Part shown: positions 5,101 through 57,982 of the stretch, in pieces
How positions within the stretch are numbered: position 1 is the first letter of the stretch
How the letters are laid out: each line of letters starts with the position of its first letter
Virus record (IMG/VR): IMGVR_UViG_3300042482_000702
Coordinates: 248,001-312,000 of that record
Length of the DNA: 64,000 nt
Reading direction: 5' to 3' (one strand)
Notes under the pieces: generated by a model
What the model saw: only the letters and a program-made list of their open reading frames with translations
Told to the model about the DNA's origin: nothing
The model's database searches: none
Made by a program: the position numbers and the translations under genes

Positions 5101-5482
5101 ATTCTAAAACGATATCTCGTTCATATAATTTATTTTTAACCGATTCTTCGGTTTCTCCAAATTTAAAAACCAACCTTTTTTGGTGGTTAAAATCAACATC
5201 ATCGTTTTCATTTTCCCAAGACAATGATATAATACCATCAATAGTATCAATCATCGAGAAATAGTCAGAGTTTTGAATTACTGACATTGTTATAACGTCA
5301 TTCTTCAAAACTCCTACTTTTTTTATATGTTCTAAATCAGGTGGTAACGGGTAACCATTAGATGGTTTTGAATCCCAGTTTTCCCCCCAAATATCTTCTG
5401 AACTATCCGAAAAAATAAATTCATATATGTTATCACCCTTATAATTTGGACCTAATTCATTAACATATATTAAATAATTCAT
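5072..5482 (-). CDS. Hypothetical protein
   Basis: ORF tightly coupled to its neighbours. Confidence 0.65.
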   Translation of the reverse strand: MNYLIYVNELGPNYKGDNIYEFIFSDSSEDIWGENWDSKPSNGYPLPPDLEHIKKVGVLKNDVITMSVIQNSDYFSMIDTIDGIISLSWENENDDVDFNHQKRLVFKFGETEESVKNKLYERDIVLEFEKTIIYEH

Positions 5483-7059
5483 TACAATATTTGACCTTTG
5501 GTGTTTACTCTTAATTGTTTATTGTTCATTTCAAACACTAAATTATTTTTGTTAGTTTTACCAATTAATTTTGCTTCAGGATATTTGTTAATCACTTTAG
5601 TTGATGCAACTTCTTGAGAAATACTTTCAGAAAGTTTTTTAATATTACTAATTTTTTCTTTTCTAACTTCCTTTAATGAAGTTGATTGTTGTATTTTAGA
5701 TTCTAAAATTTGTTTTTCTTTCTCATTGATTTTAAAATATTTTTCCAAAATACTATCAACTTTTGATTCGCTAAACAATCCTTCTATCATTTCTTCCATA
5801 CGACTAGAATGGTCGTCACTCATAGAATGATGTCTATTTTTACGCTTTGGATAGTTTGGTAATTCATCGTAGATATCATCCGGGTTTTCATCATTAACAT
5901 CATCATAACTAAATCCTTCACCCATCTCATCTTTTCTAGTTTTAACTTTAAATGGTTTACCTGTTGTTTTTTTATAGTAATTAAAAGCGTTTTCACCATC
6001 ATTTGGTCCAAACCAGTTTTGTTTATCACCATATTTGTCGTGTAATTGTTTAAAAGTTTCAAATTCTTCAGTATCAAAATCATCACCAGCTATTCCATAT
6101 AACTCAGAATCTTTAGGTGTTCTATCTTTTTCATCAAAATATTTATCACCTTTGAAATCTTTTCTATCTAAATTACCAAATGAACCATACATTCCTTCAC
6201 CCATTTCACCACTTGGTACTTCAGGTTGTAATTCTTCATCACCCATTTCGTCAGAACCCATTTCGTCTTGACCTTCATCATTTCCACCATCAAAAGGATT
6301 TTCATCTTCAATACCTTCTAATTTATTCATAATATCTTCTTTATCTTCTTCTTCTAAAGATTCTAAATCTAAAGCCGATAAAATAGAGTTGATAACATAT
6401 TTTACATCTTTTGATGAAAGATTTTCTTCTTCACTATCTTCAAGGATTCTTAATTTTTGAGCTAATTTCCCTGTTAATTTTTGAATAACTTTAAGGTTAA
6501 CAACCTCATCGTCCATTTCTTGGTCATCTCCTAAATCCATATCTTCTTCCGGTTCAGGTAAATCTAATTCTTCTTCAGGTGCAGGAGCGGGGGCAGGTGC
6601 CGGTGCAGGAGCGGGTGCTGGTGCAGGAGCCGGAGCAGCTGCCGGTGCTACTTGTTCTGTCGCATCTATTTTTAAAATATATTTCGTAGCGTCATTATCG
6701 CTTTCAAAAAATAAATTAACATTATTTTCTTGACCTTCATTAACATTAATTTCTTTTGCAATTAAGTTAAGTCTTTTAAAGGCTTGTGAATATGATGAAT
6801 AATATTTTCTATTTTTCATAGGGTCTAAATAATCACCTTCACCGGTAGATTCGGATATTGTTTTTTTAATTACATAACCATTTCTTTCTTTAACAATTTG
6901 ATAATTGTTTCCGTCAGCCAATACTTTATTATATTCAACTGATTTATTCTCATTAATTGAATTTGGAGTATTTTCTTTATATCTGGCAATTTCCATTATA
7001 CGAGTAATTTTTTCCATACCCTCTAATTTTTCACTACCAACTGGTTTTAATTTTCCCAT
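5482..7059 (-). CDS. Acidic, PA-repeat protein (possible head scaffold/core)
   Basis: Very acidic, APAPAP linker, many (I/L)xE motifs; TATTTAT motif upstream. Confidence 0.55.
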   Translation of the reverse strand: MGKLKPVGSEKLEGMEKITRIMEIARYKENTPNSINENKSVEYNKVLADGNNYQIVKERNGYVIKKTISESTGEGDYLDPMKNRKYYSSYSQAFKRLNLIAKEINVNEGQENNVNLFFESDNDATKYILKIDATEQVAPAAAPAPAPAPAPAPAPAPAPAPEEELDLPEPEEDMDLGDDQEMDDEVVNLKVIQKLTGKLAQKLRILEDSEEENLSSKDVKYVINSILSALDLESLEEEDKEDIMNKLEGIEDENPFDGGNDEGQDEMGSDEMGDEELQPEVPSGEMGEGMYGSFGNLDRKDFKGDKYFDEKDRTPKDSELYGIAGDDFDTEEFETFKQLHDKYGDKQNWFGPNDGENAFNYYKKTTGKPFKVKTRKDEMGEGFSYDDVNDENPDDIYDELPNYPKRKNRHHSMSDDHSSRMEEMIEGLFSESKVDSILEKYFKINEKEKQILESKIQQSTSLKEVRKEKISNIKKLSESISQEVASTKVINKYPEAKLIGKTNKNNLVFEMNNKQLRVNTKGQIL

Positions 7060-7135
7060 TTTTTTATTTTTGTTTTTTAAATTAATTTATATATAAATAT
7101 ATTCAGAATTAAAAATGTTGAGATTTTAATTCTTT

Positions 7136-7882
7136 TTATTGTATTTCATTTAAGGATAATGATTTATCAATGTACTCATTTTGAAAATCAAACAATTTTT
7201 CTAGGTATCCATTTCTTCTTAATACCTTGAAAACTAAATTTTCATTTGATAGTTCCCCACCTTTTTCTAACCCTGAAGTTCTATACTTTTTTAACTTATC
7301 TTTATACCTATCTATTAATTTTTTCGCATCGTCCAATGATTCATCTTTAGCGTTTTCAATAACATCATCAATGGTTTTCATCCATTCTTCTGATTTTATT
7401 TTAACTGATTGGGTATCAATTTCTACATTTTCTTTTTTTGGTTCGCTAACCCATTCATCAAATAAAACAGAATATTCACCACTACTAAAATGTTTTTCTA
7501 CATCATCCTGAACATACAATTCAACATCATATCCATATATGGTTATATTATGTTTGTCATTATATAAAGTTTTTTTTAATCTAAACAATTCTTCATACAA
7601 TGGTAATTCTTTTTCCGAAAATTGTTTAAAATCCACAATTATATGTAAATCAACATCAGAATATTTTGACCAATTAAAATTTGCCAACGAACCGGTCATA
7701 ACCACATCGGAGACAATTACATCAACACCCAAAAAATCAATGAACTCATAAGCAATTTCTAAAAGACGTTCCCTTACTTTGGGAGCCATCGTTTCTACTT
7801 CATCTTCTTGTGAGTTCCAAAATTTAGGATTTAGTTCGTCTTGTAATCTAAAACTGGATAATATACTTTTTAAATTGCTCAT
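7136..7882 (-). CDS. Pol-beta-family nucleotidyltransferase
   Basis: GS...SDVDLH signature (hG[GS]x9-13DhD) and downstream VELY. Confidence 0.8.
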   Translation of the reverse strand: MSNLKSILSSFRLQDELNPKFWNSQEDEVETMAPKVRERLLEIAYEFIDFLGVDVIVSDVVMTGSLANFNWSKYSDVDLHIIVDFKQFSEKELPLYEELFRLKKTLYNDKHNITIYGYDVELYVQDDVEKHFSSGEYSVLFDEWVSEPKKENVEIDTQSVKIKSEEWMKTIDDVIENAKDESLDDAKKLIDRYKDKLKKYRTSGLEKGGELSNENLVFKVLRRNGYLEKLFDFQNEYIDKSLSLNEIQ

Positions 7883-7912
7883 TAACTATAAATACTTAAA
7901 TATTTATAATTG

Positions 7913-10670: not shown

Positions 10671-11174
10671 TTAATTTTTGTCATTTGAATTATTCTCACC
10701 ATATTTATCTATAATTTGTTCAACACGATGATAAGACTTTCTTCCCATATTAAATTTGATTGTTTTGTTACTCCCATCGTTAATTCTGTAAGATAAATCA
10801 ACATTACCATCACTGTCAATTGTTATATTAACAGGTAATTTAATATTATCACGATGTTTAAAAATGTGAGACCTATTTCCATCAATATGTAAATCAATAC
10901 TGTTATCAATTTTTTCATACGATAATTTATAATCATTGGGATTAGTTTCAAATTCTCTGAACATTTTTTTGAACACCGTTTTATCATCAAGTTTTAATCC
11001 AGACATTAATATGGATTCAAGTATTTGACGACCAAACAATTTCATAAATATATGTACACCTAATGTCATTAATAAAAATTCCCCAAAATTTTCATTTATG
11101 GTTTTTTTTCCTGTGTGCATCTCAAGGATTCTACTTTTTTCTTCTTGAGAAATATTATTAAATAAATTTTTCAT
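10671..11174 (-). CDS. Hypothetical protein with N-terminal EEKSRILEMH...INE motif
   Basis: ORF; motif family shared with 52790 and 57347. Confidence 0.65.
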   Translation of the reverse strand: MKNLFNNISQEEKSRILEMHTGKKTINENFGEFLLMTLGVHIFMKLFGRQILESILMSGLKLDDKTVFKKMFREFETNPNDYKLSYEKIDNSIDLHIDGNRSHIFKHRDNIKLPVNITIDSDGNVDLSYRINDGSNKTIKFNMGRKSYHRVEQIIDKYGENNSNDKN

Positions 11175-11223
11175 ATTAATTTTTATTATAAATATATTAC
11201 AAAAAAAAAGAGACCGAAGTCTC

Positions 11224-12045
11224 TTAAAATTTATAAAAATATTTTGAATCCGTTTTGTATAAATATTTTTTATACCCCAAATCCTGAATCATCTTTTTAC
11301 CGGTCTCTATTCCATTATAAACATCCTCAACAACCACATACTCATTTCTTGTGTGATAGTCGTAATAACCTATCGCAAAATTGATACAGGAGAAGTCAAA
11401 TAAGTTCTTCAGAGCATAAACATCAGTATATGGGTTTGAAAAGTATTCTTGTTCACCCTTAAAGTTTTCTGTTAAGACATTATCACATGTCTTAAAAAAA
11501 TCACTCTCTCGGTCAAACAATTGTGTTCCCATACAAAATTCTGTAACCATTCTGTTTCCCGGAGCATCAAATTGAATTCCGTATCCTACATTTATAAAAA
11601 AATTGGGGTCAGCCTTTTTGGACCCGTGACATCCGGTTTCTTCAGATACAAAGAAAGCCGCCTTTAGATTTGGCAATTCTTTTAATAATTCCAAACAAGC
11701 ATAAACACCACATTTATCATCACCACCAATACCGGTTGGATTTCCAAAATCGTTATAAGCCTTTAACGCTGGTTTGAGTTCATATTGATTGTTCTGTAAC
11801 ATTTCCTCACGAATATTTATCGTGTCTATGTTATGAACCGTATCTGTATGAGCAATTACACAGGGAAAATAATCGATAAATTCGTCTGTTTGTTTTATAG
11901 CGTAGATATTTTTATGTTCATCCACATTGAAGGGAATCCCATTTTCCTCTAACCAGTTGATTAGAAAATCTACCATTCTGTCCTCTTGATATGTTTTTGT
12001 CGGAACCGACAATACATCTTTTAATAATTGATAATTTCTTTCCAT
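11224..12045 (-). CDS. M20/M28-family zinc peptidase
   Basis: AHTDTV, GGDDKCG, SEETG, and YHT metal ligands. Confidence 0.85.
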   Translation of the reverse strand: MERNYQLLKDVLSVPTKTYQEDRMVDFLINWLEENGIPFNVDEHKNIYAIKQTDEFIDYFPCVIAHTDTVHNIDTINIREEMLQNNQYELKPALKAYNDFGNPTGIGGDDKCGVYACLELLKELPNLKAAFFVSEETGCHGSKKADPNFFINVGYGIQFDAPGNRMVTEFCMGTQLFDRESDFFKTCDNVLTENFKGEQEYFSNPYTDVYALKNLFDFSCINFAIGYYDYHTRNEYVVVEDVYNGIETGKKMIQDLGYKKYLYKTDSKYFYKF

Positions 12046-13531: not shown

Positions 13532-13940
13532 GGGAGTGACACGGAATTGACTATTCGTAATAGTTATTCGGGGCACGTAGTGAGATGTTCTCTATCACTT
13601 AAATCTATGGGTACAACAATTTAGACGGAAACGTTTTAAACAAAATGGCTCTAGTAGGTCTTGTACGTCAAGATGAGCTTGTGAACGTAGCGTAAGCAAA
13701 CACACATTGGGGTCGACGGATATGTGTACCTAGCAACAGAAATATCTTAAGGTGTGATACCACCCGAAGAGTGTCAAGGTCTCGTTTGAGGGTCTACCTA
13801 TTAAAGTGAACCTCCCACAGTTGTAGGTAATGATGGAAAAATTAGAACCTTCTATTTGTCAGTTGAGAATTAACTGAATAAACGTGTAGTCCTTAATAGG
13901 TAATACAAATAACACTTGGGTTCGAGTCCCAACACTTCCA
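13532..13940 (+). ncRNA. ssrA: tmRNA
   Basis: Acceptor GGGAGTG/CACTTCC with G3-U70; 5' GGAATTGAC; T-arm TTGGG-TTCGAGT-CCCAA; internal tag ORF 13627..13695; smpB nearby. Confidence 0.92.
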
Positions 13941-14065
13941 CGTCCACTGGAGAGTCCCAACACCTCCACACAAAAAAGAGACCTAAATGGTCTCTTTTTT
14001 TATTGATAATCACCAATAAAAAAACCACCCGAAGGTGGCTTATTATCAGTTCAAATGTTTATTTT

Positions 14066-16530: not shown

Positions 16531-16607
16531 TAGTCAGAACAGGATTCGAACCTGTGTACCCTCGTATGAGTTCGTCATACCGTGCATCTCCAATGTGCTA
16601 CCTGACT
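16531..16607 (-). ncRNA. tRNA-like RNA with non-canonical anticodon arm
   Basis: Acceptor AGTCAGG/TCTGACT and perfect T-arm ACAGG-TTCGAAT-CCTGT; anticodon arm TATGA-CGAAC-TCATA lacks U33. Confidence 0.55.
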
Positions 16608-17995: not shown

Positions 17996-18565
17996 TTATT
18001 TTAAAAGTTGTTTAATTCTAATTATATTTTCGTTAAGGTCATCGTCTTTTTTCTTTTTTTTCGGTTTGTCGGACAATGATTTATTAATAAACGATATTGG
18101 ACTTAAAAGTATATCGGAAAAAATATCAGACCCCCCAATTCTAGGTTCATTTGATTTTACAATAGGTTCTTTGGTTTTAGGTTCTTTGGTTTTAGAGTCT
18201 TTAACATTTTTGTTAAATTGATGACCACTTAAAAAATTATCAACATTTTGTTTTGATTTGTTTTTATTTAGTATTGAGAATGATATTTCTTTATCGGAAA
18301 AATATCCAATAGTGTGTCCTTGTTTTACTGTACTACCAATTCCAACAATAACTCTACCTATTTCACAAAAATCTGAATAAAATGTCTCCCCATTAACATT
18401 ATGCTCAATACTAAGATTTCCATCACAACGATTAAAGGATGGTACAACTATACCATCATAAGGACTAACTAATCTATCGTTATCGTATGATGAAAGACCG
18501 ACAGTTTTTGATAACATACCTTGGTTTAAGTTACCATTAGGTGAAGGTGAGATGAAATGATTCAT
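17996..18565 (-). CDS. Degenerate M23-peptidase-like protein
   Basis: SPYDGIV...IEH...VKQGHTIG fold pattern, but the HxH metal motif is absent. Confidence 0.5.
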   Translation of the reverse strand: MNHFISPSPNGNLNQGMLSKTVGLSSYDNDRLVSPYDGIVVPSFNRCDGNLSIEHNVNGETFYSDFCEIGRVIVGIGSTVKQGHTIGYFSDKEISFSILNKNKSKQNVDNFLSGHQFNKNVKDSKTKEPKTKEPIVKSNEPRIGGSDIFSDILLSPISFINKSLSDKPKKKKKDDDLNENIIRIKQLLK

Positions 18566-19191
18566 TATAATAAATTTTTTATACGATTAATACTCTCAAG
18601 TATTCTTTTATTTTTAAAAAAATTTTCATTATTTAGCGACATTATTTTTGATAATCCAGCAGATAATAAATCACCTCCAAGTTCCGGTTTTCCATCAACA
18701 TAGGTAGTAGTTGTTGTGTCATCATTATTGGTTAAACCACTTTCTGTTGAACTATTTTTTTTTGACCCTTCTGGTTGACCACTTCTATATGAAATATGAA
18801 AATGTCCTCCGGTGGCTTTGGCTGTTGGATTTGTATATTCATCAATATATGAAAATCCATTATATTTTGTTTTATATGAATCTAATAATGACTTAAAAGA
18901 TGAATGACATGAACTATCTAAAGTCACATCAACCGCTTCACCTTTGGTATGACGACTAGTATAACTAGTAATTTTTTTATGGAAAGCGTCATTACCGGAT
19001 GTGAAAGTTAAAGGACAATTACTCTTTAGTTTTTTCCAATCATCCATGAATTTAGATAATATATCTAAAAAATCAGATTGTAATTCACCCCCTGAAGTTA
19101 ATTCATTTCCTTTTTCAGCATTCCCAACACTTTTAAGTTTAGATTTAAATTCTGATGATGAAATTTCCAATAATGTTATTAATTTTTTCAT
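18565..19191 (-). CDS. M15/LAS-type zinc peptidoglycan peptidase
   Basis: SRH-x6-D (SRHTKGEAVD) and HFH motifs. Confidence 0.7.
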   Translation of the reverse strand: MKKLITLLEISSSEFKSKLKSVGNAEKGNELTSGGELQSDFLDILSKFMDDWKKLKSNCPLTFTSGNDAFHKKITSYTSRHTKGEAVDVTLDSSCHSSFKSLLDSYKTKYNGFSYIDEYTNPTAKATGGHFHISYRSGQPEGSKKNSSTESGLTNNDDTTTTTYVDGKPELGGDLLSAGLSKIMSLNNENFFKNKRILESINRIKNLL

Positions 19192-19798: not shown

Positions 19799-19874
19799 AA
19801 TTTGTTAATATATCAAAATAAATAGTTTAAAAATAAAAAAAGTGAGGACAATTCCTCACTTTTTATCTTTTTTC

Positions 19875-47111: not shown

Positions 47112-48719
47112 TTACTTACTTAACACTTTTTCTTTCATTTTATCAGTAGCTGTCTCTATTTTAGTTTTAACACCACCTAATAGGGGACATATAAGAGTAG
47201 ATAAATTTCTCTCAACAGATTGTCCGAAATCGGAATGTTCTACCATTTCAGCCAATGAGTTTCTTAATATATCATAAAACGGACCTGTCATACCAACAGA
47301 TTTTTTAATTTTATCCGCAGCTTCTTCAACAATTGATTTAGTTAGAACAGGCACTAGAAAATTACAATTAGTTAATTTACCGATATCTGTAAGACCAACG
47401 TTACCTACCGCTTTAACAACTATACCACCAATCCATCCATCAGTATCTAACGGTGTTAATTTAGTAATAAGTTGTTTTGCCAAATATTCTTTAAAGTATT
47501 GGAATGTTCCTTCAGCACCAGTTCCGAATAAGCCTTTTAATGCGTCCCAGAATTGCTCGTTAATTAATTGTTCTCTGAATCCTTGAGAATTTAAATAATT
47601 CGATTCAATAAGTATTTCATTGAAGAATTTATCTCTTTGAGATTCTGTTTCAAGTATTCTATTCTCAATTAAAAATTTGGTTCTATTTCCAATAATATTA
47701 GATTCTGTGATTAAATTTTGTTTTTTAAGTTTAGAACTTTGATATAGACTTTCTTTAATCATTGTTTTTAATTCGTTTTGAACTGACTCATTTTGTATTC
47801 CTCCGATGTAAAACAAATAAGGACTTGGTGATGGTAAATATTTGGGTTTATCACCTCTTAATAATTTTACAATGAATTCAAATCTTAATTTATTTCTAAA
47901 TAATTTGAAAGGGTTTTTATCATTAGGAACACCTGGATAATCAGCTTTATCTATTCCGGAGAAACTATTGTACTTACCACTACCATAACAACTATTAATT
48001 TGACCTTGCATTTTTAAAACATCCGGTCTTGCATCTAAATTATTGTATGAGTATTGGAATGCGGAATCTAAATAAGTTTTTAATATGGTATTACAAGTAG
48101 TCTCGTCTAATTTCATATCCACAGTAGTTGGTGTTTCCATTGCTGCTTGTGGTAAATAAATTGAGATGTTCTTCCATCCATAATCAGAATTTAATTGTTC
48201 TGACATATTTGGTTGATACTTGATTTGTAAATCAGAAGTTTTAGCCGGTAATGAGTTTTCAGGTTTTATTTTTAATACTTCTGTACTTTTAAACACATTA
48301 GTTAAAACATCATTCCATTTTTGGAATATGTCCGACACGGCATTTTGGTCAATTAATCCTCGTAATGTTGTTGTAATTTGTTTTGCCTTTTCAGTATCAG
48401 TTTTGGTTATACCAAAATTTGCTAAAATATCATTGTATTTTCCTCCAACGGTATCACAAGACCATCCTCTTTTTTCTTTTGTTGAAATATTTTCAGCAAC
48501 CATTCTTCCACTACCATCAGGAATTAAATCTAAATAAAAAACAATATCTTGATTTTTACTATTTTTACCTGACCAAACTCTCTTATTTTTGTAGTCTGAG
48601 ACAGTACCGCCAACTAACCATTTCGGAAAACATCCCGCACGATTAAATTCAATCAATTTAGCTCTATCGGCAATTTTTGGGTCCGACACTTGTTCTTTTA
48701 TAATCTCTCTCTTTTTCAT
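47112..48719 (-). CDS. Putative head-packaged/ejection protein
   Basis: IIKEQ, LITES, LINEQ motifs; hydrophobic C-terminal helices; start likely MKKREII. Confidence 0.55.
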   Translation of the reverse strand: MKKREIIKEQVSDPKIADRAKLIEFNRAGCFPKWLVGGTVSDYKNKRVWSGKNSKNQDIVFYLDLIPDGSGRMVAENISTKEKRGWSCDTVGGKYNDILANFGITKTDTEKAKQITTTLRGLIDQNAVSDIFQKWNDVLTNVFKSTEVLKIKPENSLPAKTSDLQIKYQPNMSEQLNSDYGWKNISIYLPQAAMETPTTVDMKLDETTCNTILKTYLDSAFQYSYNNLDARPDVLKMQGQINSCYGSGKYNSFSGIDKADYPGVPNDKNPFKLFRNKLRFEFIVKLLRGDKPKYLPSPSPYLFYIGGIQNESVQNELKTMIKESLYQSSKLKKQNLITESNIIGNRTKFLIENRILETESQRDKFFNEILIESNYLNSQGFREQLINEQFWDALKGLFGTGAEGTFQYFKEYLAKQLITKLTPLDTDGWIGGIVVKAVGNVGLTDIGKLTNCNFLVPVLTKSIVEEAADKIKKSVGMTGPFYDILRNSLAEMVEHSDFGQSVERNLSTLICPLLGGVKTKIETATDKMKEKVLSK

Positions 48720-48720
48720 A

Positions 48721-49752
48721 TTAAAATTCATTATTATCAACATTATTTACATAAGCCTCAGCATCAGGTATTGGTCTTTCTTCTGGTGCTGGTGCTGGTC
48801 TTTCTTCTGGTGCCGGAGCTGGTGTTGTTCCACCACATATTTTACTAACATCAGCATCGGTAAATCCATTTGGAAAACCTTTAGCAACTAACGCCGCTTG
48901 TGTTTTAATCCAAAATTTACCGTCTTGGATTAACCCTAAACATGCCTGAACTTGTCCAATAACACCTGTTGGTGATGTTTTACACCCTTTTTTATAAGTA
49001 CCTCTACCTGTACAATCAATATATCTATTTGTACCAGGGGGTGTTACAGGTGGTGTTACAGGTGGTGTTACAGGTAAATCGTCCGGAACTGTGCTCATAG
49101 TTGATAAAATCCACCAAGCAATCAATCCCGCGGCCAAAAGACCGACACCCCATTTAGCAGCGGAAGATTTAACTATTTCTTTAAATGATAACCCTTTCTT
49201 TACCATTACTTCAACTTCTTCAGACCCACCTTCTCTAACAACTTTTTCTAACCCTTCTTTACTAGCCTTAGCAAAGTCGTCGGCACCGGCCTTTATTGTT
49301 TTACTAGCACCTCCTCTAGTTCGTTTGGTAATACCATTAACTATTTGTCTAGAGTTGTTTCTAAGTTGATTTGTAATATTGATAACAATACCCCTATCCG
49401 CCAATTCTTTACTACCCTGTTTTGCCGCTGCTTCAGCCTCTTCTTGAGCTAATCTAATTAATTCCGCTTTAATACCGCTTTTTTGGGTGTCGGTTAATGA
49501 TTGTAAACCCGCTTTTTTCATAACAGATTTTTGAGCTGCGCGTTCTACTGATGAGTAAACTTTTCCTTGTTTTGAAATCACCCCGACACCCTTCATGGCG
49601 GCTTGAACTTCAGCCCTTAAAATAGATAATATTTCTGTTTCGGCCACGTTTTTAAATAAACTACCTAACGCACTTTCGTTTAAAGTGAATTTATTTTCAA
49701 TACCGATAAGTTCCGATATTCTATGTATTTCTGTAATTAAATTTTTTTCCAT
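48721..49752 (-). CDS. TM protein with C-terminal peptidoglycan-binding-like domain
   Basis: TM WGVGLLAAGLIAWWIL; VTPP repeats; QVQACLGLIQDGKFWIKTQAAL. Confidence 0.6.
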   Translation of the reverse strand: MEKNLITEIHRISELIGIENKFTLNESALGSLFKNVAETEILSILRAEVQAAMKGVGVISKQGKVYSSVERAAQKSVMKKAGLQSLTDTQKSGIKAELIRLAQEEAEAAAKQGSKELADRGIVINITNQLRNNSRQIVNGITKRTRGGASKTIKAGADDFAKASKEGLEKVVREGGSEEVEVMVKKGLSFKEIVKSSAAKWGVGLLAAGLIAWWILSTMSTVPDDLPVTPPVTPPVTPPGTNRYIDCTGRGTYKKGCKTSPTGVIGQVQACLGLIQDGKFWIKTQAALVAKGFPNGFTDADVSKICGGTTPAPAPEERPAPAPEERPIPDAEAYVNNVDNNEF

Positions 49753-49773: not shown

Positions 49774-51201
49774 TTATGTTGTTGGTTGTTTTGCAACCTT
49801 TGATAAACTTTTTTTAAGAAAATCAGTACCTTGTTTAGCCATTTTACCCATAGTTTCTTTGGCTTTAGGTGGGATATATTTTGAAATTCCTCTCTCATCC
49901 ATTGTTAGACCCATGGCCATTAAACCACCATTATCTAATTTTCCATCAGTTCTTAATTTTTCGTATTTACCTGTTTCAGGGTCATTATTGAAACAAGTTG
50001 CAAATTTTTTAACACCGTCCTCAGTTTCTTTGGTAAATGTATTTCCGTTAGGTATTTTTGTAATATCAACTTTACACGCAGGAAACATTATATTATGAAT
50101 GTCTCTAAAATACTTATTCACGTTTGAAACATCATCTCCGGTGTCGTTAATTCCTAACACAATTGGTCTAACTAATAATCCAACACCGACACCCGTAACA
50201 ACTGCTGTAACACCTTGTTTAGAAAATAGTTGAGATATAAATGTATCAACACCCTTAATAATAGAATTAAAACCTGAGATTACTTTAGTAACGATTGTTT
50301 TTGCTCCCGGAATATGTTTAATAATTAAATTACCAAATGATGATAGTGATGATGAAATGCCCGGTAAAGATTTTGATAATTTTGTTAGGGTATTTTTCAA
50401 AAATCCACTAGCCGGTTTACCCGCTTTGACCGCTCTTAAAGCAGTCTTAGTTGTAAGACCTGCGGCAGCGGCAAATACAAATGAAATTAAATCAATTAAT
50501 AACCCTGAATACGGGTCTTGTTGTCTTTCGGGGTCAGCTGGGTCAAAATTACCTGAAATAATCTCAAATACATCTAAAATAACTATCATTGCCCAAACTA
50601 ATTTATTTGCTCCCGTTGTAACAGGTATCATTGCCGTTACAACATCTATAACAGTCCCCGCTACGGTATAAACATTTTTTCTTATCCATCTTAATGCCGG
50701 TAAAAACCCATTCATTAAGGCTTTCTTGGCTAACTCAGCCGCACCACTCGCAATGGTACTACCAACTTTTTTGGTTGCATTCCAAGCCGACTTAGCGGTA
50801 TTTTTTATCCAATCTGATTGTTCATTAATTAATTCATCATCATTAATTAAAGATAACGACTCTAAAAATAAATCTTTAGTCCATCTAATAGAATTTAAAA
50901 CACTTTCTTCAATAATATTAGCACTATTTTTATAATTTTCTTTAATTATTTCATTAATAACCCAAGTATTTTCCCATATATTACCAATAAAACCTAATTC
51001 TTTAGAAATTAAATTATCCGCCCAAATTAAATATTTTTCATCTTCAGTAATGACAAAATCAAAAACATAACCTTCCTCAATCATTGGTAAAAATTCTTGA
51101 TTTTCAGTTAAAGTTTTTCTACTATCATAGTTCATCATAAGAAGAGCGCGATTAAGGACTTCATTCCTTTCATTTAAATTATATTTGTTATTATAAGCCA
51201 T
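49774..51201 (-). CDS. Multi-helical hydrophobic protein with PG-binding-like C-terminus
   Basis: N-terminus paralogous to 51191 (LNE...RxLLMMxYDxxKTLxEN); GDDV...FTKETEDGVKKF...DG. Confidence 0.55.
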   Translation of the reverse strand: MAYNNKYNLNERNEVLNRALLMMNYDSRKTLTENQEFLPMIEEGYVFDFVITEDEKYLIWADNLISKELGFIGNIWENTWVINEIIKENYKNSANIIEESVLNSIRWTKDLFLESLSLINDDELINEQSDWIKNTAKSAWNATKKVGSTIASGAAELAKKALMNGFLPALRWIRKNVYTVAGTVIDVVTAMIPVTTGANKLVWAMIVILDVFEIISGNFDPADPERQQDPYSGLLIDLISFVFAAAAGLTTKTALRAVKAGKPASGFLKNTLTKLSKSLPGISSSLSSFGNLIIKHIPGAKTIVTKVISGFNSIIKGVDTFISQLFSKQGVTAVVTGVGVGLLVRPIVLGINDTGDDVSNVNKYFRDIHNIMFPACKVDITKIPNGNTFTKETEDGVKKFATCFNNDPETGKYEKLRTDGKLDNGGLMAMGLTMDERGISKYIPPKAKETMGKMAKQGTDFLKKSLSKVAKQPTT

Positions 51202-51727
51202 ACCTAGATTTAACAACACAAAGGTTGTTTTTTTTATTTTTAGGGTCTTGACACCAAGTTTGTATTTGAGTTTTAACAGGATTAATAACTGAATCTTTTA
51301 AATCATCTGCAAACCATTCACCTTCAATTGCTTCCCAAAATGTTTCACCTCCTACAGCAGGATACGATTTAATCATTGCAACACTATTCGGTAATATGTT
51401 AAATGTTTTTGAAATAATGGAGGGTAATCCTTGGTCAGGGTCCATATCTCTCGTAATACTACCAATACCTCTCTTTCTATCATTACTAATAGCCATAAAA
51501 AACGCTTTAGCATTTACCTCAGGCTTTATTGTTGGGTTTCCAAAAATATTAGGAATTTGCTCAGGATGAGCCATAAAACTTTTGGTTAAATTTGTGAAAT
51601 ATTCATCTTCAGTTTGTTCAAATATTAAAGAAGTATTTTCAACTAAAGTTTTTTTATTATCATATTTCATCATAAGAAGAACTCGTTTAAGAGCATCGTT
51701 CCCCTCATTTAAATTAAATTTTTCCAT
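51191..51727 (-). CDS. Hypothetical protein, LNE-motif family
   Basis: ORF; shared N-terminal motif. Confidence 0.6.
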   Translation of the reverse strand: MEKFNLNEGNDALKRVLLMMKYDNKKTLVENTSLIFEQTEDEYFTNLTKSFMAHPEQIPNIFGNPTIKPEVNAKAFFMAISNDRKRGIGSITRDMDPDQGLPSIISKTFNILPNSVAMIKSYPAVGGETFWEAIEGEWFADDLKDSVINPVKTQIQTWCQDPKNKKNNLCVVKSRYGL

Positions 51728-51787
51728 ATTATTGTTTTGTTATAAATATCATTAATAATATAAATATTATTTTATTTTAATAAACCA

Positions 51788-52030
51788 TTACGTTAATGGG
51801 TTTGCCTTTCCCCTCGTTAACCCTGATTCCCATTTTTCACCTTTTAATCCTAACATATTTGCTGGACCTCTAGTTAAACCTGTTGTCCATTTTGTTACGG
51901 TATTAGTTGAACCACCCTCGGAACTAGCACCATCGACAGGAGCTTCTTCTTGTTCCCCAAGTTCTTCATTTGAATTTGTTGTTGTGTATTCTTTCATTAA
52001 AGAAATAATACGGTCAATATCTGTAATCAT
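51788..52030 (-). CDS. Small protein with duplicated KWxxGLTRGxAN
   Basis: Internal repeat. Confidence 0.6.
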   Translation of the reverse strand: MITDIDRIISLMKEYTTTNSNEELGEQEEAPVDGASSEGGSTNTVTKWTTGLTRGPANMLGLKGEKWESGLTRGKANPLT

Positions 52031-52410: not shown

Positions 52411-52788
52411 TTAATTGATTGGTAAATTTGGGGATGTTAAAACATCAATCATTTCTGATAATCTTTCCGATTCTATTTCACTTTGAAATCCTTTTGTATA
52501 CCAATTACAATCACCTTTAATACACGATTGTTTTAATTTAAATTGCACGATAATTTTATTACTAGGTTTTAAAACTTTTAAGACAGCACCATCTTTCTTA
52601 AATTCAAAAAAGAAATTTCCCGCTCCTTGTATTTTTTTAACTAATACTTTTCTACCTCCGGTGTTATTGGCATCGGTGTATCCCCTACTTCTTAATTTTG
52701 TTTCCAAATTTGAATTGGATTGTTCATTAATAAGTCGTTTTATAATACTAATTAAATCACTTTCTTTTAATCTAATAATTTTTTTCAT
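52411..52788 (-). CDS. Hypothetical protein, INEQ-motif family
   Basis: MKKIIRLKESDL...LINEQ. Confidence 0.6.
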   Translation of the reverse strand: MKKIIRLKESDLISIIKRLINEQSNSNLETKLRSRGYTDANNTGGRKVLVKKIQGAGNFFFEFKKDGAVLKVLKPSNKIIVQFKLKQSCIKGDCNWYTKGFQSEIESERLSEMIDVLTSPNLPIN

Positions 52789-52789: not shown

Positions 52790-53422
52790 TTAATTATATT
52801 TCATAAATCTTTTGAACATATCTAAAGATTCGGTAATGTTTGAAATGATGTCATCTTGTTCACCTTGTTCAAACTCATCAACCTCATCTTCAAGACCAAA
52901 TAAATCCATAATATTTAAATCAAAATCGTCATCACTATCATCAGGATTGGTTAACGCCATTATATCGTCATCATCGTCAAATAATTCATCGTCTAATTCC
53001 TCAAAATCATCATCTTCAAATGTTCCGTGGTCTAAATCATCATCACCATCACCAATCATATCTAATTGTTCCCCTAATGAAACATAATGTCCTTCGTCTT
53101 CTTCACTTTCAAAGGATTCTTCCGGTTCATATTGAGAACCTGGTGATATATGTCCTTGTTCCTTTGGTTCTTCATCAGAAAATAATCCAGTACTTTTTCC
53201 GTCGGCATGCATTTCGTTAATTTTCATAGTTTTATATGATGAAACTTCGCCTTTATTGTTAACGGTAACACCTTCTTTATCGTTTGCGTAATCTTGCGTA
53301 TATAAAGGTTGGTTTTTCTCTGGTTGAGCGTAACTAGTTACGTATCCATCATAAATCTCTTTATGTTGGTCAAGGATATTATTTCTTTCCTCGTTGGTCA
53401 TTTTGAAAAAATATGCATTCAT
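52790..53422 (-). CDS. Acidic hypothetical protein
   Basis: EERNNILDQH N-terminus; NITES C-terminus. Confidence 0.6.
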   Translation of the reverse strand: MNAYFFKMTNEERNNILDQHKEIYDGYVTSYAQPEKNQPLYTQDYANDKEGVTVNNKGEVSSYKTMKINEMHADGKSTGLFSDEEPKEQGHISPGSQYEPEESFESEEDEGHYVSLGEQLDMIGDGDDDLDHGTFEDDDFEELDDELFDDDDDIMALTNPDDSDDDFDLNIMDLFGLEDEVDEFEQGEQDDIISNITESLDMFKRFMKYN

Positions 53423-53453
53423 AATTTTTGGTTTTTATATATAAATATATTGT

Positions 53454-54059: not shown

Positions 54060-54111
54060 ATTTTTATTGATTCTATTTAACAATAAATATAATTAAAGTA
54101 TTTATTATCAT

Positions 54112-54741
54112 ATGAAAAGGTTATTAATAATTAACGAGCAACAAAAAAAATTGATTTTAACTGAATCAATTATCAATGAATTTACAAAATCAATAGAAGA
54201 AGGGTATGACTATACCTCTAAAGTATTGAAAGAAGTGAATGAAAATTATAAATTAAATTTTGAGTTTCTTATAACCTGGGGAGCTAGTATTGGAGGTTTT
54301 ATCTCTCCAATAAGTGAATTTTTGCAAGGTAGATTCCCTGAAATTTCTGATTTAGATTTGAGTTTAATTTTAACGGGTATTATTGCGGTTAATTATATTG
54401 ATAATAGAAAAAGTGTAGAAAAAGTACTTAAACTAATTAGAGAGGAGGGATTATCCGATATTTTTAAAGTTGGGTTAGATAAATCAATTGAGTTGAAAGA
54501 GGTTATGTTTAAATTTTTAGAGAGTTTGAATATAACATTATTTAAAATCACAAAAATGATGTCTTATGCTTTTATCATACCTATTTTAGTTATGTTATAT
54601 ACAATGGTGATAAATAAACAAATTAATGAGTCTGATGCTAAAGAAATAACTTTAAGAATTTTAGGTAGTGGATTAGTTAATGTTGGTGGAATTATGATAA
54701 AAGATTTAATTAGTAAATTAATTGCTCGTTTTAAAGGTTAA
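54112..54741 (+). CDS. Membrane protein, INE-motif family
   Basis: Several hydrophobic helices; TATTTAT upstream. Confidence 0.6.
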   Translation: MKRLLIINEQQKKLILTESIINEFTKSIEEGYDYTSKVLKEVNENYKLNFEFLITWGASIGGFISPISEFLQGRFPEISDLDLSLILTGIIAVNYIDNRKSVEKVLKLIREEGLSDIFKVGLDKSIELKEVMFKFLESLNITLFKITKMMSYAFIIPILVMLYTMVINKQINESDAKEITLRILGSGLVNVGGIMIKDLISKLIARFKG

Positions 54742-56458: not shown

Positions 56459-56718
56459 ACCTATAAATACTTTTATTATTAATTAATTTAGTTATATTGA
56501 TAATAAAATAGATTATTATGTCACATTATAAAGAATTACTTAATTGGATTGAGTCAGAGCAGGAGAAATTTCCGGATGAAGATATTCAAAATGCTGAAAT
56601 GGTTGCGTACGCAACTTTAGAATTAGTTAAAAGAAAAATAATGGAATTGGAAGAAAACAATGAAAATCATAAATAATTACATTTATGACGATATTTATAA
56701 TATAAAATTAATTCAGTT

Positions 56719-57231
56719 ATGAAAAAAATAGTTATAAACGAAAAAGAACTTCGTAAATCAATTAGACAACACCTATTGGAGCAATCACAGGTAGACGCTA
56801 AAGACAATAGAGAAGAAAAACAAAGATGTGTTGCCGGTAATGTTATTCCGTTAGACACAATGATTGGCCCATCCAAAAATTTTAACAATTATACTTCTAC
56901 CGTTCTTAAAAGAGATGGTGGTATTCACGGAATGGTTGATACTTTAGATATGTTAAAAACATTAAGATTACACCAAGGAATCGAAGATTCTGGAGAACAT
57001 TTATCGTACAATCTAATGAACCATTTAAATACTTTTAGAAATAAAAATTATTTTGACGAAACAAACAGTGAATGTCAAAAAGCTATGGATAAAGTTATTG
57101 AATTGTATAAAGAAAATGACCACGGTGAAGACCTTGTTAAAGACATTGAAAAGGTGTTAAGACATCCTGACCCTTCACCTAGAGCTAAAGAATACCTTAA
57201 AAGATGTTTAATCTTAGTTAAGGAAAAATAA
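56719..57231 (+). CDS. Hypothetical protein, INE/LLEQ-motif family
   Basis: ORF with TATTTATA upstream. Confidence 0.6.
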   Translation: MKKIVINEKELRKSIRQHLLEQSQVDAKDNREEKQRCVAGNVIPLDTMIGPSKNFNNYTSTVLKRDGGIHGMVDTLDMLKTLRLHQGIEDSGEHLSYNLMNHLNTFRNKNYFDETNSECQKAMDKVIELYKENDHGEDLVKDIEKVLRHPDPSPRAKEYLKRCLILVKEK

Positions 57232-57346
57232 ACCTCATTTAATTGGGGACATTTAGGACCGTTATCAGTGATGGTAACAAAATAAAGGGGAAGTTCGCTA
57301 CTATCCCCTTTTTTATTTTTTGTGATATTTATGAATAAAAAGTATC

Positions 57347-57982
57347 ATGAAAAAACACATAATCACCGAACAAGAAAAAAATAGAATACTTAAATTACAT
57401 TTAAGTGAAAAAAATATTAACGAGGATTTAACATCTTATTACGGTGGAGATGAATTTAAAAAAATGTTAGATAAAATGAGTGAACCGAGTCCAATGTTTG
57501 ACTACACCTCTGAAACTTCTTTATCTCCAAAAAAGTTTAATGAATTTTATGATAAAATAGAGGGAAAATTATTTGCATCATTTGGGGGTTTAGGTAAATA
57601 TGTTGAATTTATTAGGGATTATCCCGCGTCACCTGAAATGAATTTAATTTTAAAAAAACATCCCGTGATTGATACGTTTTCATCTTATGATGACTATAAA
57701 AATTCGCCATATTATGAAATGTCAGAAATTTTTTTTAAACCTAATAGGTATCATACTGAAAACGATAAACGCAGGTCTTTTGACCATTTTATAGATAAAT
57801 TTGGAGACCTTATAATTAAAAAAGGGGGCGACTTTAATAAAGAAAATGTTAAAACATATAGAGATAAAACAGAAAAAATGTCACCTGAAGATAAAACCCG
57901 AGAATACACAGTAGGTATTAACAAAGTTCATCAAAATTTTGATGATGAAGGAAATGTTATCAGTAGAAAAAACATTAATTAA
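57347..57982 (+). CDS. Hypothetical protein, ITEQ/INE-motif family
   Basis: MKKHIITEQEKNRILKLH. Confidence 0.6.
   Translation: MKKHIITEQEKNRILKLHLSEKNINEDLTSYYGGDEFKKMLDKMSEPSPMFDYTSETSLSPKKFNEFYDKIEGKLFASFGGLGKYVEFIRDYPASPEMNLILKKHPVIDTFSSYDDYKNSPYYEMSEIFFKPNRYHTENDKRRSFDHFIDKFGDLIIKKGGDFNKENVKTYRDKTEKMSPEDKTREYTVGINKVHQNFDDEGNVISRKNIN

What the first reader, a model, noticed from the sequence alone, without database searches (positions are those of the whole stretch)
5482..57982. Large family of unrelated proteins sharing (I/L)xE-centred terminal motifs: a candidate head-packaging/maturation tag
At least 12 ORFs carry motifs such as INEQ, LNES, ITEQ, EEKxRILxxH or NENIxRIKxLL at an N- or C-terminus (5482, 10671, 17996, 18565, 47112, 48721, 49774, 51191, 52411, 52790, 54112, 56719, 57347). 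Many of them, or their operons, lie behind TATTTAT promoters. T4 prohead protease cleaves after (I/L)xE. Inference: a portable capsid-targeting peptide that loads diverse cargo (PG hydrolase, TM proteins) into heads.
Basis: partly seen in the sequence, partly recalled or inferred. Interest (0 to 1): 0.6.

Follow-up and report, generated by a model that had tools for sequence, protein, structure and literature searches.

The report
Scaffold-like leader tags on phage proteins
About one protein in ten of this 322-kb lake phage starts (or, rarely, ends) with a short shared tag that resembles the tail of the phage's own scaffold protein and has prohead-protease cut sites beside it, so the tag most likely loads many unrelated proteins into the capsid.

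Summary
All 13 listed ORFs carry the motifs. Genome-wide, at least 43 of 400 ORFs start with a leader. It has a hydrophobic-x-Glu box in the first ~10 residues, an amphipathic helix (x-R-I/M-x-x-L/M-L/M/H), and usually a second hydrophobic-x-Glu box before the cargo. Conservation is at the protein level and the cargoes are unrelated.

The phage is an uncultured T4-like jumbo phage of freshwater Bacteroidota (the clade that encodes ribosomal protein bS21). It has a T4-type S77 prohead protease. Its capsid protein carries a conserved LINE|A box where T4 gp23 is cut.

All 40 leader genes that I could assign to a promoter unit sit in TATTTAT units, the same units that hold the head genes. One leader type matches 713 protein clusters in public data, almost always from residue 1.

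The strongest evidence comes from a sister lineage. There the motif RMQxLAGII lies at the extreme C-terminus of scaffold proteins in 77 contexts and at the N-terminus of diverse small proteins in 36, and is internal in only 2.

Best reading (about 0.65): the leaders imitate the scaffold tail, enter the prohead with it and are cut off by the protease. This is a large-scale variant of the T4 capsid-targeting sequence. Packaging and cleavage have not been tested.

The parts
57347..57424 (+). N-terminal leader, type B, residues 1-26 of ORF 57347-57982: IITE box, EKNRILKLH helix, INE|D box
   Evidence: profile A1 matches 713 clusters
56719..56781 (+). N-terminal leader, residues 1-21 of ORF 56719-57231: VINE box, helix, LLE|Q box
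54112..54180 (+). N-terminal leader, residues 1-23 of ORF 54112-54741: IINE, ILTE and IINE boxes. Relatives of this cargo carry the type A leader.
53357..53422 (-). N-terminal leader, type B variant, residues 1-22 of ORF 52790-53422 (EERNNILDQH helix). There is no clean second hydrophobic-x-Glu box. The C-terminus also has NITE|S followed by a helix.
52723..52788 (-). N-terminal leader, residues 1-22 of ORF 52411-52788: RLKE box, IIKRL helix, LINE|Q box
51989..52030 (-). N-terminal leader, residues 1-14 of ORF 51788-52030 (DRIISLMKE|Y).
   Evidence: rank 7 with the type C model
51638..51727 (-). N-terminal leader, residues 1-30 of ORF 51191-51727: NLNE box, KRVLLMM helix, LVE|N box
51103..51201 (-). 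N-terminal leader, residues 1-33 of ORF 49774-51201 (ATG start): NLNE box, NRALLMM helix, LTE|N box. The cargo has a weak tape-measure-like PHROG match.
49675..49752 (-). N-terminal leader, residues 1-26 of ORF 48721-49752: LITE box, HRISELIGIE helix (close to type C and to the scaffold tail), LNE|S box
48693..48719 (-). Short N-terminal leader M-K-K-R-E-I-I-K-E|Q of ORF 47112-48719 (start revised from 48743)
18568..18603 (-). C-terminal module of ORF 18565-19191 (weak endolysin-like match): ILE|S box, then INRIKNLL helix, then stop
   Evidence: rank 8
17999..18037 (-). C-terminal module of ORF 17996-18565 (weak M23-peptidase match): LNE|N box, then IIRIKQLLK helix, then stop. Nearly the same peptide is N-terminal in genome ORF 30974.
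   Evidence: rank 6
11091..11174 (-). N-terminal leader, type B, residues 1-28 of ORF 10671-11174: EEKSRILEMH helix, TINE|N box. The cargo begins with a hydrophobic segment.
6949..7059 (-). N-terminal leader, residues 1-37 of ORF 5482-7059: KITRIMEIA helix, SINE|N box. The cargo is acidic and predicted disordered, and lies in the TerL-side head region.
57326..57332 (+). TATTTAT box 14 nt before the ATG of ORF 57347
56692..56698 (+). TATTTAT box 20 nt before the ATG of ORF 56719
54099..54105 (+). TATTTAT box 6 nt before the ATG of ORF 54112 (the mRNA may be leaderless)
53441..53447 (-). TATTTAT box before ORF 52790-53422; this unit also holds 52411
51742..51748 (-). TATTTAT box before ORF 51191-51727; this unit also holds 49774, 48721 and 47112
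19818..19824 (-). TATTTAT box before ORF 19193-19798 (has an N-terminal membrane segment); this unit also holds 18565 and 17996
11188..11194 (-). TATTTAT box before ORF 10671-11174
7093..7099 (-). TATTTAT box before ORF 5482-7059

Best explanation
The tags are removable prohead-targeting leaders.

Anatomy. Each leader has three parts:
- a hydrophobic-hydrophobic-(T/N/K)-Glu box within about the first 10 residues;
- an amphipathic helix of the form x-x-R-(I/M)-x-x-(L/M)-(L/M/A/H)-(G);
- usually a second hydrophobic-x-Glu box, after which conservation stops and the unrelated cargo begins.
In the few C-terminal copies the order is mirrored (cargo, Glu box, helix, stop), so the Glu box again lies between cargo and helix.

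Proposed mechanism. The helix resembles the extreme C-terminal tail of the gp22-like scaffold protein. A protein that carries it would bind whatever prohead component the scaffold tail binds. By analogy with P22 this is the inner face of the capsid protein. The protein would then be built into the prohead core. The T4-type S77 prohead protease cuts after the Glu of the boxes, as it does in the capsid protein at L-I-N-E|A. This frees the cargo inside the head, from where it can leave with the DNA.

Shown here: the motif, its restriction to termini, selection at the protein level, unrelated cargoes, co-occurrence with the S77 protease, placement in the same promoter class as the head genes, and identity with scaffold tails in a sister lineage.

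Inferred: binding, cleavage, presence in virions and ejection.
For: (1) Protease and its expected site. Peptidase_S77 is at G000:C1:242155-242646 (E 7.9e-25), next to a Gp23 capsid gene, with a scaffold-like and a portal-sized ORF as neighbours, named from their position and sequence character. gp21 cuts after L/I-x-E, T4 internal proteins have 10-19-residue N-terminal targeting propeptides, and Alt and gp21 also have C-terminal propeptides (PMC9026906). The capsid protein has YENQAS-x-LINE|A, invariant in 6 clade members and followed by a variable stretch. This box lies just upstream of the first residues that align with mature T4 gp23.

(2) The tag is real. 30 of 400 ORFs carry the box against about 2 expected. 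Codon choice within the tag follows genome usage, with serine read from both codon families.

(3) It is portable. 24 of 33 type A proteins have no relative in the genome once the first 25 residues are removed. Cargoes carrying a leader in relatives include Phage_lysozyme, Peptidase_M23 with PG_binding_1, and an ECF sigma factor. In G000 itself: an Acb1-like protein carries a clear type C leader, an Fe/Mn superoxide dismutase has only a looser N-terminal extension with two Glu boxes, and one type A protein matches an HNH-endonuclease PHROG family. Orthologues gain or lose the tag.

(4) Scale. The type A pattern is found in at least 119 IMG/VR contigs. The type B profile matches 713 clusters at E<=1e-3, and 148 of the best 150 match from residue 1. 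Leader length is 29 +/- 1, it ends in ISE, LNE or INE, the next residue is Q in 91 of 125, and the cargoes fall into 67 BLASTP groups.

(5) Co-regulation. 40 of 43 leader genes lie in TATTTAT units and none in TAT[CA]TTTG units, against 177 and 72 for the other genes (Fisher p 5.7e-6). TATTTAT also precedes the scaffold, protease, portal and giant structural ORFs.

(6) Scaffold-tail identity. In IMG/VR, RMQxLAGII has 115 distinct contexts. 77 are at the extreme C-terminus of 220-500-residue acidic proteins, 36 at the N-terminus of diverse small proteins, and 2 internal. One such acidic protein lies between the S77 protease and the Gp23 capsid gene. In Flavobacterium phage immuto, a model built from scaffold tails finds two N-terminal leaders as its best hits outside the scaffolds (E 3e-4 and 0.04). 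The N-terminal form continues as ...AGIITESQYKxxLNE, so the type A leader MKIIITESQYKxLxE looks like its shortened version. The residue before the Gly differs between lineages in scaffold and leaders alike: LAG in the immuto-like lineage, L/M-M-G in the G000 clade.

(7) The same helix occurs at either terminus, N-terminal in genome ORF 30974 and C-terminal in window ORF 17996, always with the Glu box on the cargo side.
Against: - There are no proteomic or structural data. Nothing shows that any of these proteins is in a virion or is cut.
- In G000 itself the scaffold tail (...FLRMKDLMGKLK, then stop) matches the leader model only weakly: rank 16 of 400 at 0.9 bits. The statistically solid scaffold-to-leader identity comes from a sister lineage.
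- The most common leader in G000 (type A) lacks the R-M-x-x-L-x-G core.
- Some cargoes are not what one expects inside a head: an ECF sigma factor, a weak DHH phosphoesterase match, a match to an HNH-endonuclease family, and two wall hydrolases that sit next to a membrane protein like a lysis cassette.
- More than 10% of ORFs is far beyond the handful of targeted proteins in T4.
- Leader cargoes are not basic like the T4 internal proteins (median pI 5.5 against 5.6 for other ORFs).
- TATTTAT is assigned as a late promoter only from the genes it precedes.
Confidence: 0.65

Rival explanations
1. The helix is a docking tag for another hub and not for the prohead. Candidates are the phage's own Hsp70 or ClpB-like chaperones, or a regulated-proteolysis adaptor. 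On this reading the Glu boxes are incidental.
For: The window encodes a ClpB-like AAA+ protein (8566-10617) and an Hsp70 (63009 onward). Hydrophobic cores with basic residues beside them, such as IIRIKQLL, resemble typical Hsp70-binding peptides (my own knowledge, not tested). Some cargoes, such as the sigma factor and the nuclease-like protein, fit a cytoplasmic role better.
Against: This does not explain why the same peptide ends scaffold proteins in 77 contexts. It does not explain why conservation stops exactly at a hydrophobic-x-Glu-Gln junction. It does not explain why the Glu box is always on the cargo side at both termini.
Confidence: 0.12
2. The shared termini are only a trace of common descent and recombination among fast-evolving late ORFans. 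The conserved 5' ends would serve as crossover points and the peptide would have no targeting function.
For: Many carriers are small ORFs in tandem arrays. 32 of 43 lie in one genome arm, from 280 kb round to 40 kb. Two small paralogue families exist.
Against: Synonymous sites vary freely, with serine read as AGT and TCN and codon use like the rest of the genome, so selection acts on the peptide and not on the DNA. The cargoes include clearly different folds. The module also occurs at C-termini and on scaffold proteins.
Confidence: 0.08
3. The leader is a translation feature of late mRNAs. These are often almost leaderless and may be read by ribosomes carrying the phage's bS21. The leader would act through the first codons or the nascent peptide.
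For: About 26 genes have TATTTAT only 4-6 nt before the ATG. The phage encodes bS21 in its head module, and PMC9723584 proposes that bS21 favours late phage transcripts.
Against: Conservation is at the amino-acid level, not the codon level. Many leader genes have ordinary 13-33-nt spacings and many closely spaced genes lack the leader. The idea cannot explain the C-terminal copies or the scaffold tails.
Confidence: 0.06
4. Chance similarity in an AT-rich genome that is rich in Ile, Leu, Asn, Lys and Glu.
For: Bare [IL]-x-E is common, with 99 of 400 ORFs having one in the first 10 residues. The TATTTAT count equals chance.
Against: 30 observed against about 2 expected for the box. 713 database clusters match from residue 1. 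The motif lies at a terminus in 113 of 115 contexts.
Confidence: 0.01

Closest known systems
[quoted passage not shown]
   Same: A short (10-19 residue) N-terminal propeptide shared by otherwise unrelated proteins. It ends in a hydrophobic-x-Glu site for an S77 protease. C-terminal propeptides also occur (Alt, gp21). The cargo is delivered into the host and includes an anti-restriction protein (PMC9026906).
   Different: T4 has a handful of carriers. This genome has at least 43 and public data hold hundreds of cargo families. I see no sequence similarity to the T4 CTS, but that is from recollection and not a tool test. Here the leader can be traced to the scaffold's C-terminal tail, which to my knowledge has not been described for T4. 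The cargoes are not basic.
Propeptide-bearing head and ejection proteins of giant phages phiKZ, 201phi2-1 and SPN3US
   Same: Large capsids that hold dozens of different proteins. Many are cut after Glu by a gp21-related protease, and their propeptides carry several redundant cleavage sites (PMC9026906; PMC5694885 and PMC10052503, listed).
   Different: Those phages use a different cleavage logo. No common portable leader is described for them in the passages I read.
P22 scaffolding protein C-terminal helix-turn-helix, and engineered scaffold-fusion cargo loading
   Same: The scaffold's C-terminal end is the element that binds the coat protein. Fusing it to foreign proteins is enough to encapsidate them (PMC9962691). 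This is the logic proposed here, occurring naturally.
   Different: The P22 fusions are man-made. P22 has no maturation protease. No sequence relation between the two tails was tested here.
Encapsulin cargo-loading peptides
   Same: Short terminal peptides, at the C- or N-terminus, dock diverse enzymes to the interior of an HK97-fold shell (PMC8346489, listed; only its abstract was read).
   Different: Encapsulins hold no DNA and do not remove the peptide by proteolysis. The peptides are not copies of a scaffold protein.

Membership tests
T4-type capsid-targeting / prohead-protease propeptide system | The phage encodes a gp21-type (Peptidase_S77) prohead protease together with a gp23-type capsid protein | tested here: met
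   PF03420 at E 7.9e-25 and PF07068 at E 1.1e-64 in the same genome. 4 of 4 near-complete relatives that carry the leader also have S77.
T4-type capsid-targeting / prohead-protease propeptide system | A short terminal propeptide shared by proteins that are otherwise unrelated | tested here: met
T4-type capsid-targeting / prohead-protease propeptide system | The propeptide ends in the protease's L/I-x-E motif, and this matches the capsid protein's own maturation site | tested here: met
   Junctions are ISE, LNE and INE. The capsid protein has LINE|A, conserved across the clade. This is sequence-level evidence only.
T4-type capsid-targeting / prohead-protease propeptide system | The carriers are physically present in heads and are cut during maturation | not testable with these tools
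   The phage is uncultured and no virion proteome exists. Every database homologue that carries a name is called only 'hypothetical protein', and all are metagenomic.
T4-type capsid-targeting / prohead-protease propeptide system | Expressed together with the head morphogenesis genes | tested here: inconclusive
   40 of 43 leader genes share the TATTTAT promoter class with the scaffold, protease and portal genes.
T4-type capsid-targeting / prohead-protease propeptide system | Sequence homology to the T4 CTS itself | not tested
   T4 sequences were not fetched. From memory there is no resemblance.
Cargo loading by scaffold-tail mimicry (works like P22 scaffold fusions or encapsulin loading peptides) | The targeting peptide matches the scaffold protein's own terminal docking peptide | tested here: met
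   Sister lineage: 77 scaffold C-termini and 36 cargo N-termini share RMQxLAGII. Synteny is protease, scaffold, capsid. Immuto scaffold-tail model finds leaders at E 3e-4.
Cargo loading by scaffold-tail mimicry (works like P22 scaffold fusions or encapsulin loading peptides) | The same relation holds within the genome of this window | tested here: inconclusive
   The G000 scaffold ends ...RMKDLMGKLK and its leaders have RI(K/Q)xMMG. The leader model scores the scaffold tail at only 0.9 bits, rank 16 of 400. The shift from LAG to L/M-M-G occurs in scaffold and leaders alike.
Cargo loading by scaffold-tail mimicry (works like P22 scaffold fusions or encapsulin loading peptides) | The peptide binds the interior of the capsid shell | not testable with these tools

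The most novel reading that the evidence does not exclude
T4-like phages of Bacteroidota have a natural, modular cargo-loading code. Any gene that acquires a 15-30-residue copy of the scaffold protein's C-terminal tail, with a protease site beside it, gets its product built into the prohead, trimmed, and delivered with the DNA. This jumbo phage uses the code on more than 40 proteins, and environmental relatives use it on hundreds of families. The cargoes include an Acb1-like anti-CBASS enzyme, wall hydrolases and a sigma factor, and probably a superoxide dismutase whose N-terminal extension is a looser match. On this reading the capsid doubles as a large, fast-evolving injected arsenal.
Probability: 0.45. 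Interest if true: 0.85.

Novelty: new variant of a known kind. Interest (0 to 1): 0.75.

Why it matters
If the leaders work as proposed, three things follow.
- A large share of the unannotated small ORFs in these abundant lake and marine phages would gain a predicted location (inside the head) and a predicted time of action (the first seconds of infection). Sequence alone would pick out candidate injected anti-defence proteins.
- The origin of capsid-targeting sequences would be explained as copies of the scaffold's docking tail.
- It would provide a short natural peptide tag, with a built-in release site, for loading foreign proteins into T4-type capsids.

The claim can be tested directly by mass spectrometry of virions of a cultured carrier such as Flavobacterium phage immuto.

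Tried and rejected
- Complex prediction on protease plus residues 1-40 of ORF 57347 gave no verdict (score 0.00). This is not evidence either way.
The family became clear only with sequences from relatives.
- [IL]-x-E is not enriched at C-termini genome-wide, so I dropped the idea of a large C-terminal class.
- Full-text searches for the peptides (ITESQ-type and RMQKLAG-type strings) found no paper. The bS21-phage paper does not mention a motif. A search for capsid targeting sequences in Bacteroidetes phages found nothing relevant.
- Pfam and PHROGs leave most window cargoes unannotated. The ESM Atlas look-ups of ORFs 47112 and 5482 were uninformative.
- blastn of the cluster against cultured phages found no match.
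No expression or transcription-start data could be obtained, and read laying was not used.
- The strict type A pattern is absent from Flavobacterium phage immuto and from a 484-kb uncultured phage. Type A is therefore specific to this clade. Immuto has its own leaders.
- Cargo pI and length do not differ from other ORFs, so the cargoes are not T4-like basic internal proteins.
- Selection on the DNA sequence was rejected from codon usage.

Full report
WHAT THE WINDOW IS. The window is G000:C1:248001-312000 of a single 322,477-bp IMG/VR virus record that CheckV rates as complete. GC content is about 32% and the window holds 21 tRNA genes. The genome has a T4-type large terminase (window 1006-2775). 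Just upstream of the window lies a T4-type head module on the minus strand: a portal-sized ORF, Peptidase_S77 prohead protease (E 7.9e-25), a 484-residue acidic scaffold-like protein, and a Gp23 capsid protein (E 1.1e-64). The protease and capsid protein are Pfam matches; the portal and scaffold are named from their position and sequence character. A ribosomal protein bS21 gene sits in this module on the opposite strand. That arrangement is the hallmark of the freshwater Bacteroidetes jumbo phages described in PMC9723584. Many genes are preceded by TAnnTTTG boxes, mostly TATCTTTG, which from my own knowledge resemble the Bacteroidota -7 promoter element. The nearest cultured relatives are distant, with terminase identity of 28% or less.

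CHECK OF THE OBSERVATION. All 13 ORFs exist and carry the quoted peptides at a terminus. The pattern is not confined to the window. Genome-wide, [IL][NT]E occurs in the first ten residues of 41 of 400 ORFs, a 4.6-fold enrichment over the rest of the proteome, and 7-fold when N, Q, S or D follows. A stricter hydrophobic-[IL]-[TN]-E box in residues 2-14 occurs in 30 ORFs. Internal windows predict 1.5 and shuffled N-termini give 2.2 +/- 1.5. A census with simple patterns gives at least 43 leader-bearing ORFs, and it still misses ORF 57347. Bare [IL]-x-E and the raw count of TATTTAT are close to chance. What is special is the extended peptide and the position of the promoter box.

ANATOMY OF THE LEADERS. 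Three related leader types can be told apart.
- Type A starts M-K-(I/L)-(I/L)-I-T-E-(S/N)-(Q/K)-Y and often continues x-x-L-x-E.
It reads M-K-x-F-I-I-T-E-E-E-K-x-R-I-L-x-M-H or M-K-N-L-F-N-N-I-S-Q-E-E-K-N-R-I-L-E-M-H. Six to twelve residues follow, and it closes with a hydrophobic-x-Glu box.
- Type C reads M-N-L-Q-E-(Q/N)-I-x-R-I-(Q/K)-x-M-M-G-(V/L)-I-x-E.

All three share an early hydrophobic-x-Glu box, an amphipathic helix around R-(I/M)-x-x-(L/M)-(L/M), and usually a closing hydrophobic-x-Glu box. Two adjacent wall-hydrolase-like ORFs (17996, 18565) carry the mirror arrangement at the C-terminus: Glu box, helix, stop. The peptide of 17996 is almost the same as the N-terminal peptide of genome ORF 30974.

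PROTEIN-LEVEL AND PORTABLE. Within the leader, serine is read from both codon families and codon usage follows the genome average. Selection therefore acts on the peptide and not on the DNA or RNA. Once the first 25 residues are removed, 24 of 33 type A proteins have no BLASTP relative in the genome.

Cargoes that carry a leader in relatives include Phage_lysozyme, Peptidase_M23 with PG_binding_1, an ECF-type sigma factor and a weak DHH match. In G000 itself, an Acb1-like 2H phosphoesterase carries a clear type C leader: 30.5 bits against a cut-off of 27 for the domain, leader. A type A protein matches an HNH-endonuclease PHROG family. A 512-residue protein with an Fe/Mn superoxide dismutase domain has a looser N-terminal extension with two Glu boxes; it is not in the strict class of 33.

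Orthologues differ in the leader. The DHH protein of G000 starts M-K-K-L-I-I-E|S-G, whereas relatives have the full type A leader before the same S-G-I-R.

SPREAD. A degenerate DNA pattern for the type A leader hits at least 119 IMG/VR contigs, against about one or fewer expected by my rough estimate. From their CheckV completeness relative to their length, the 38 records checked look like fragments of genomes of roughly 300 kb. 18 of the 38 contain an S77 protease, including all 4 that are at least 90% complete.

A 32-position profile of the type B leader finds 713 clusters at E<=1e-3 among 1.84 billion representatives. 148 of the best 150 match from residue 1, on proteins of 38 to 485 residues. 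In 125 of those 150 the leader closes, usually at residue 29 +/- 1, with ISE, LNE, INE or a similar box. The next residue is Gln in 91 of the 125. Beyond that point the sequences fall into 67 unrelated groups. Those homologues that carry a name are called only 'hypothetical protein', and all are metagenomic.

LINK TO THE PROTEASE. gp21-type proteases cut after L/I-x-E. T4 internal proteins carry 10-19-residue N-terminal capsid-targeting propeptides. Alt and gp21 also lose C-terminal propeptides. In phiKZ-like phages, propeptides carry redundant cleavage sites (PMC9026906).

The capsid protein of this clade has Y-E-N-Q-A-S-x-L-I-N-E|A. This stretch is invariant in six members and is followed by a variable stretch. 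It lies four residues before the first position that HMMER aligns with mature T4 gp23, whose solved mature chain is 65 residues shorter than the precursor. The expected maturation site of the capsid protein therefore has the same form as the boxes in the leaders (I-T-E, I-N-E, L-N-E).

LINK TO HEAD-GENE EXPRESSION. Two upstream motifs stand out: TATTTAT and TATCTTTG. TATTTAT sits 8-30 nt before the start codons of the scaffold, protease, portal and giant structural ORFs. I read it as the late promoter, by analogy with the T4 late promoter TATAAATA (from memory). Forty of 43 leader genes lie in TATTTAT units and none in TAT[CA]TTTG units. The other genes split 177 to 72 (Fisher p 5.7e-6).

LINK TO THE SCAFFOLD (the strongest new evidence). 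The scaffold-like protein of G000 ends with a Glu box (N-L-I-E|S) followed by ...F-L-R-M-K-D-L-M-G-K-L-K and the stop codon. A relative has the same ending. In Flavobacterium phage immuto the scaffold-like protein ends ...S-R-W-Q-K-L-A-G-I-I-K. Two unrelated small immuto ORFs begin M-K-K-Q-I-L-S-E-Q-F-(K/R)-R-M-Q-x-L-A-G-I-I-T-E-S. A model built from four scaffold tails retrieves these two as its best hits outside the scaffolds (E 3e-4 and 0.04).

An IMG/VR scan for R-M-Q-x-L-A-G-I-I gave 115 distinct contexts. 77 are at the extreme C-terminus of acidic proteins of 220-500 residues, 36 at the N-terminus of diverse proteins of 50-357 residues, and only 2 internal. On contig L159 the acidic protein lies between the S77 protease and the Gp23 capsid gene, which is the scaffold position.

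In scaffolds a V-I-S-E or I-V-E box precedes the tail. In cargoes an I-I-T-E box follows it. The N-terminal form often continues ...A-G-I-I-T-E-S-Q-Y-K-x-x-L-N-E, which makes the type A leader look like a shortened form of it.

Within the G000 clade the leaders have M-M-G or L-M-G and the scaffold has L-M-G. In the immuto-like lineage both have L-A-G. The direct statistical match between the G000 scaffold tail and the G000 leaders is nevertheless weak, at rank 16 and 0.9 bits.

MECHANISM. By analogy with P22, I propose that the helix docks the cargo to the prohead component that the scaffold tail binds. In P22 the scaffold's C-terminal helix-turn-helix binds coat protein, and fusing it to foreign proteins loads them into capsids (PMC9962691). 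The S77 protease would then cut at the Glu boxes. Binding, cleavage, packaging and ejection are inferences.

Points against this reading:
- some cargoes look unsuited to a head (a sigma factor, a nuclease-like protein, and a possible lysis cassette at 17996-19798);
- the number of carriers is very large;
- the type A leader lacks the tail core;
- there are no proteomic data at all.

The rivals are docking to another hub such as the phage's Hsp70 or ClpB, mere descent and recombination, a translation signal of nearly leaderless late mRNAs, and chance. Each fails to explain the scaffold-tail identity, the terminal mirror symmetry, or the protein-level conservation.

COMPARISON AND NOVELTY. The closest known system is the T4 CTS with gp21. 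The defining features that sequence can test are met; physical packaging cannot be tested here. The new elements are:
- the scale, with more than 10% of ORFs here and hundreds of cargo families in public data;
- the three leader types and the C-terminal variant;
- the derivation of the leader from the scaffold's C-terminal tail;
- the kinds of cargo, among them an Acb1-like enzyme.

No paper found in the library describes this. I rate it a new variant of a known kind, with interest 0.75.

LIMITS. 

Noticed in passing
window 15007-15413 (-): A full-length GOLLD RNA (Rfam RF02032, 288 bits, E 1.8e-82). It lies beside an unusually long tRNA-Pro call at 16045-16136 and a further tRNA-like match at 16531-16607.
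   Followed up: partly
window 13532-13943 (+) and 14493-14930 (-): The phage carries its own trans-translation pair: a tmRNA (RF00023, 62.3 bits), which ARAGORN did not report, and an SmpB protein (PF01668, E 8.9e-47).
   Followed up: partly
L016:7337-7495 (+) = G000:C1:243337-243495, about 4.5 kb upstream of the window: A ribosomal protein bS21 gene on the opposite strand inside the head module, between the protease and the portal. This places the genome in the bS21 phage clade of PMC9723584.
   Followed up: partly
genome-wide; in the window e.g. 54099-54105 (+), 56463-56469 (-), 58964-58970 (-): About 26 genes have the TATTTAT box only 4-6 nt before the ATG. If the box works like a -10 element, these late mRNAs would be leaderless or nearly so. 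That is notable for a phage that encodes bS21.
   Followed up: partly
genome-wide; in the window e.g. upstream of 11224-12045, 14493-14930, 22362-22859 and 23038-23496: A second promoter class, TAnnTTTG (mostly TATCTTTG, often with TTTG about 20 nt upstream). It resembles the Bacteroidota host consensus and precedes enzyme genes. None of the leader genes lies in such a unit.
   Followed up: partly
L005:9610-10173 (-) = G000:C1:29610-30173: An Acb1-like protein (anti-CBASS 2H phosphoesterase, PF23474, 30.5 bits) that carries a type C leader. It would be a candidate injected anti-defence enzyme.
   Followed up: partly
L012:5304-6842 (+) = G000:C1:165304-166842: A 512-residue protein with an Fe/Mn superoxide dismutase domain (E 2.6e-39). 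It has a 30-residue N-terminal extension with two hydrophobic-x-Glu boxes, and sits behind a TATTTAT box.
   Followed up: no
window 8566-10617 (+) and 63009-64000 (-, runs off the window): Phage-encoded ClpB-like double AAA+ protein and Hsp70 (DnaK-like) chaperone.
   Followed up: no
window 19875-20900 (-), 58971-59564 (-), 61115-61606 (-): A T4 Rnl1-type RNA ligase and two HAD domains of the RNA-repair 'Swiss Army Knife' type (PF18143). This suggests a tRNA or RNA repair set alongside the 21 tRNA genes.
   Followed up: no
window 23522-28426 (+) and 28501-30639 (+): A 1634-residue protein with BspA-type LRR, DUF285 and Fib_succ_major domains, followed by a 712-residue protein with a match to a PHROG family annotated as baseplate wedge tail fiber connector. 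These are likely host-recognition proteins.
   Followed up: no
L008:14628-15689 (-) = G000:C1:94628-95689: A 353-residue protein with N-terminal membrane segments and a long run of EEPIEE / EELIDE-type acidic repeats. It has 30 [IL]-x-E triplets, the densest in the proteome.
   Followed up: no
G004 record (loci L148 and L153/L154): One near-complete relative holds two different head modules, with two S77 proteases and two capsid genes at 45% identity. One scaffold tail is of the G000 type and the other of the immuto type. Either the assembly is chimeric or the phage has two head gene sets.
   Followed up: no
L102, minus-strand ORF listed at coordinate 11793 (289 aa): One protein carries the type C leader twice, at residue 9 and again at residue 123. 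This may be a fusion of two leader-bearing genes.
   Followed up: no
window 39783-40430 (-) and L017:6676-7767 (-): Two endonuclease-like genes. The first, inside the tRNA cluster, has an HNH domain (Pfam). The second, outside the window, matches an HNH-endonuclease PHROG family and carries a type A leader behind a TATTTAT box.
   Followed up: no
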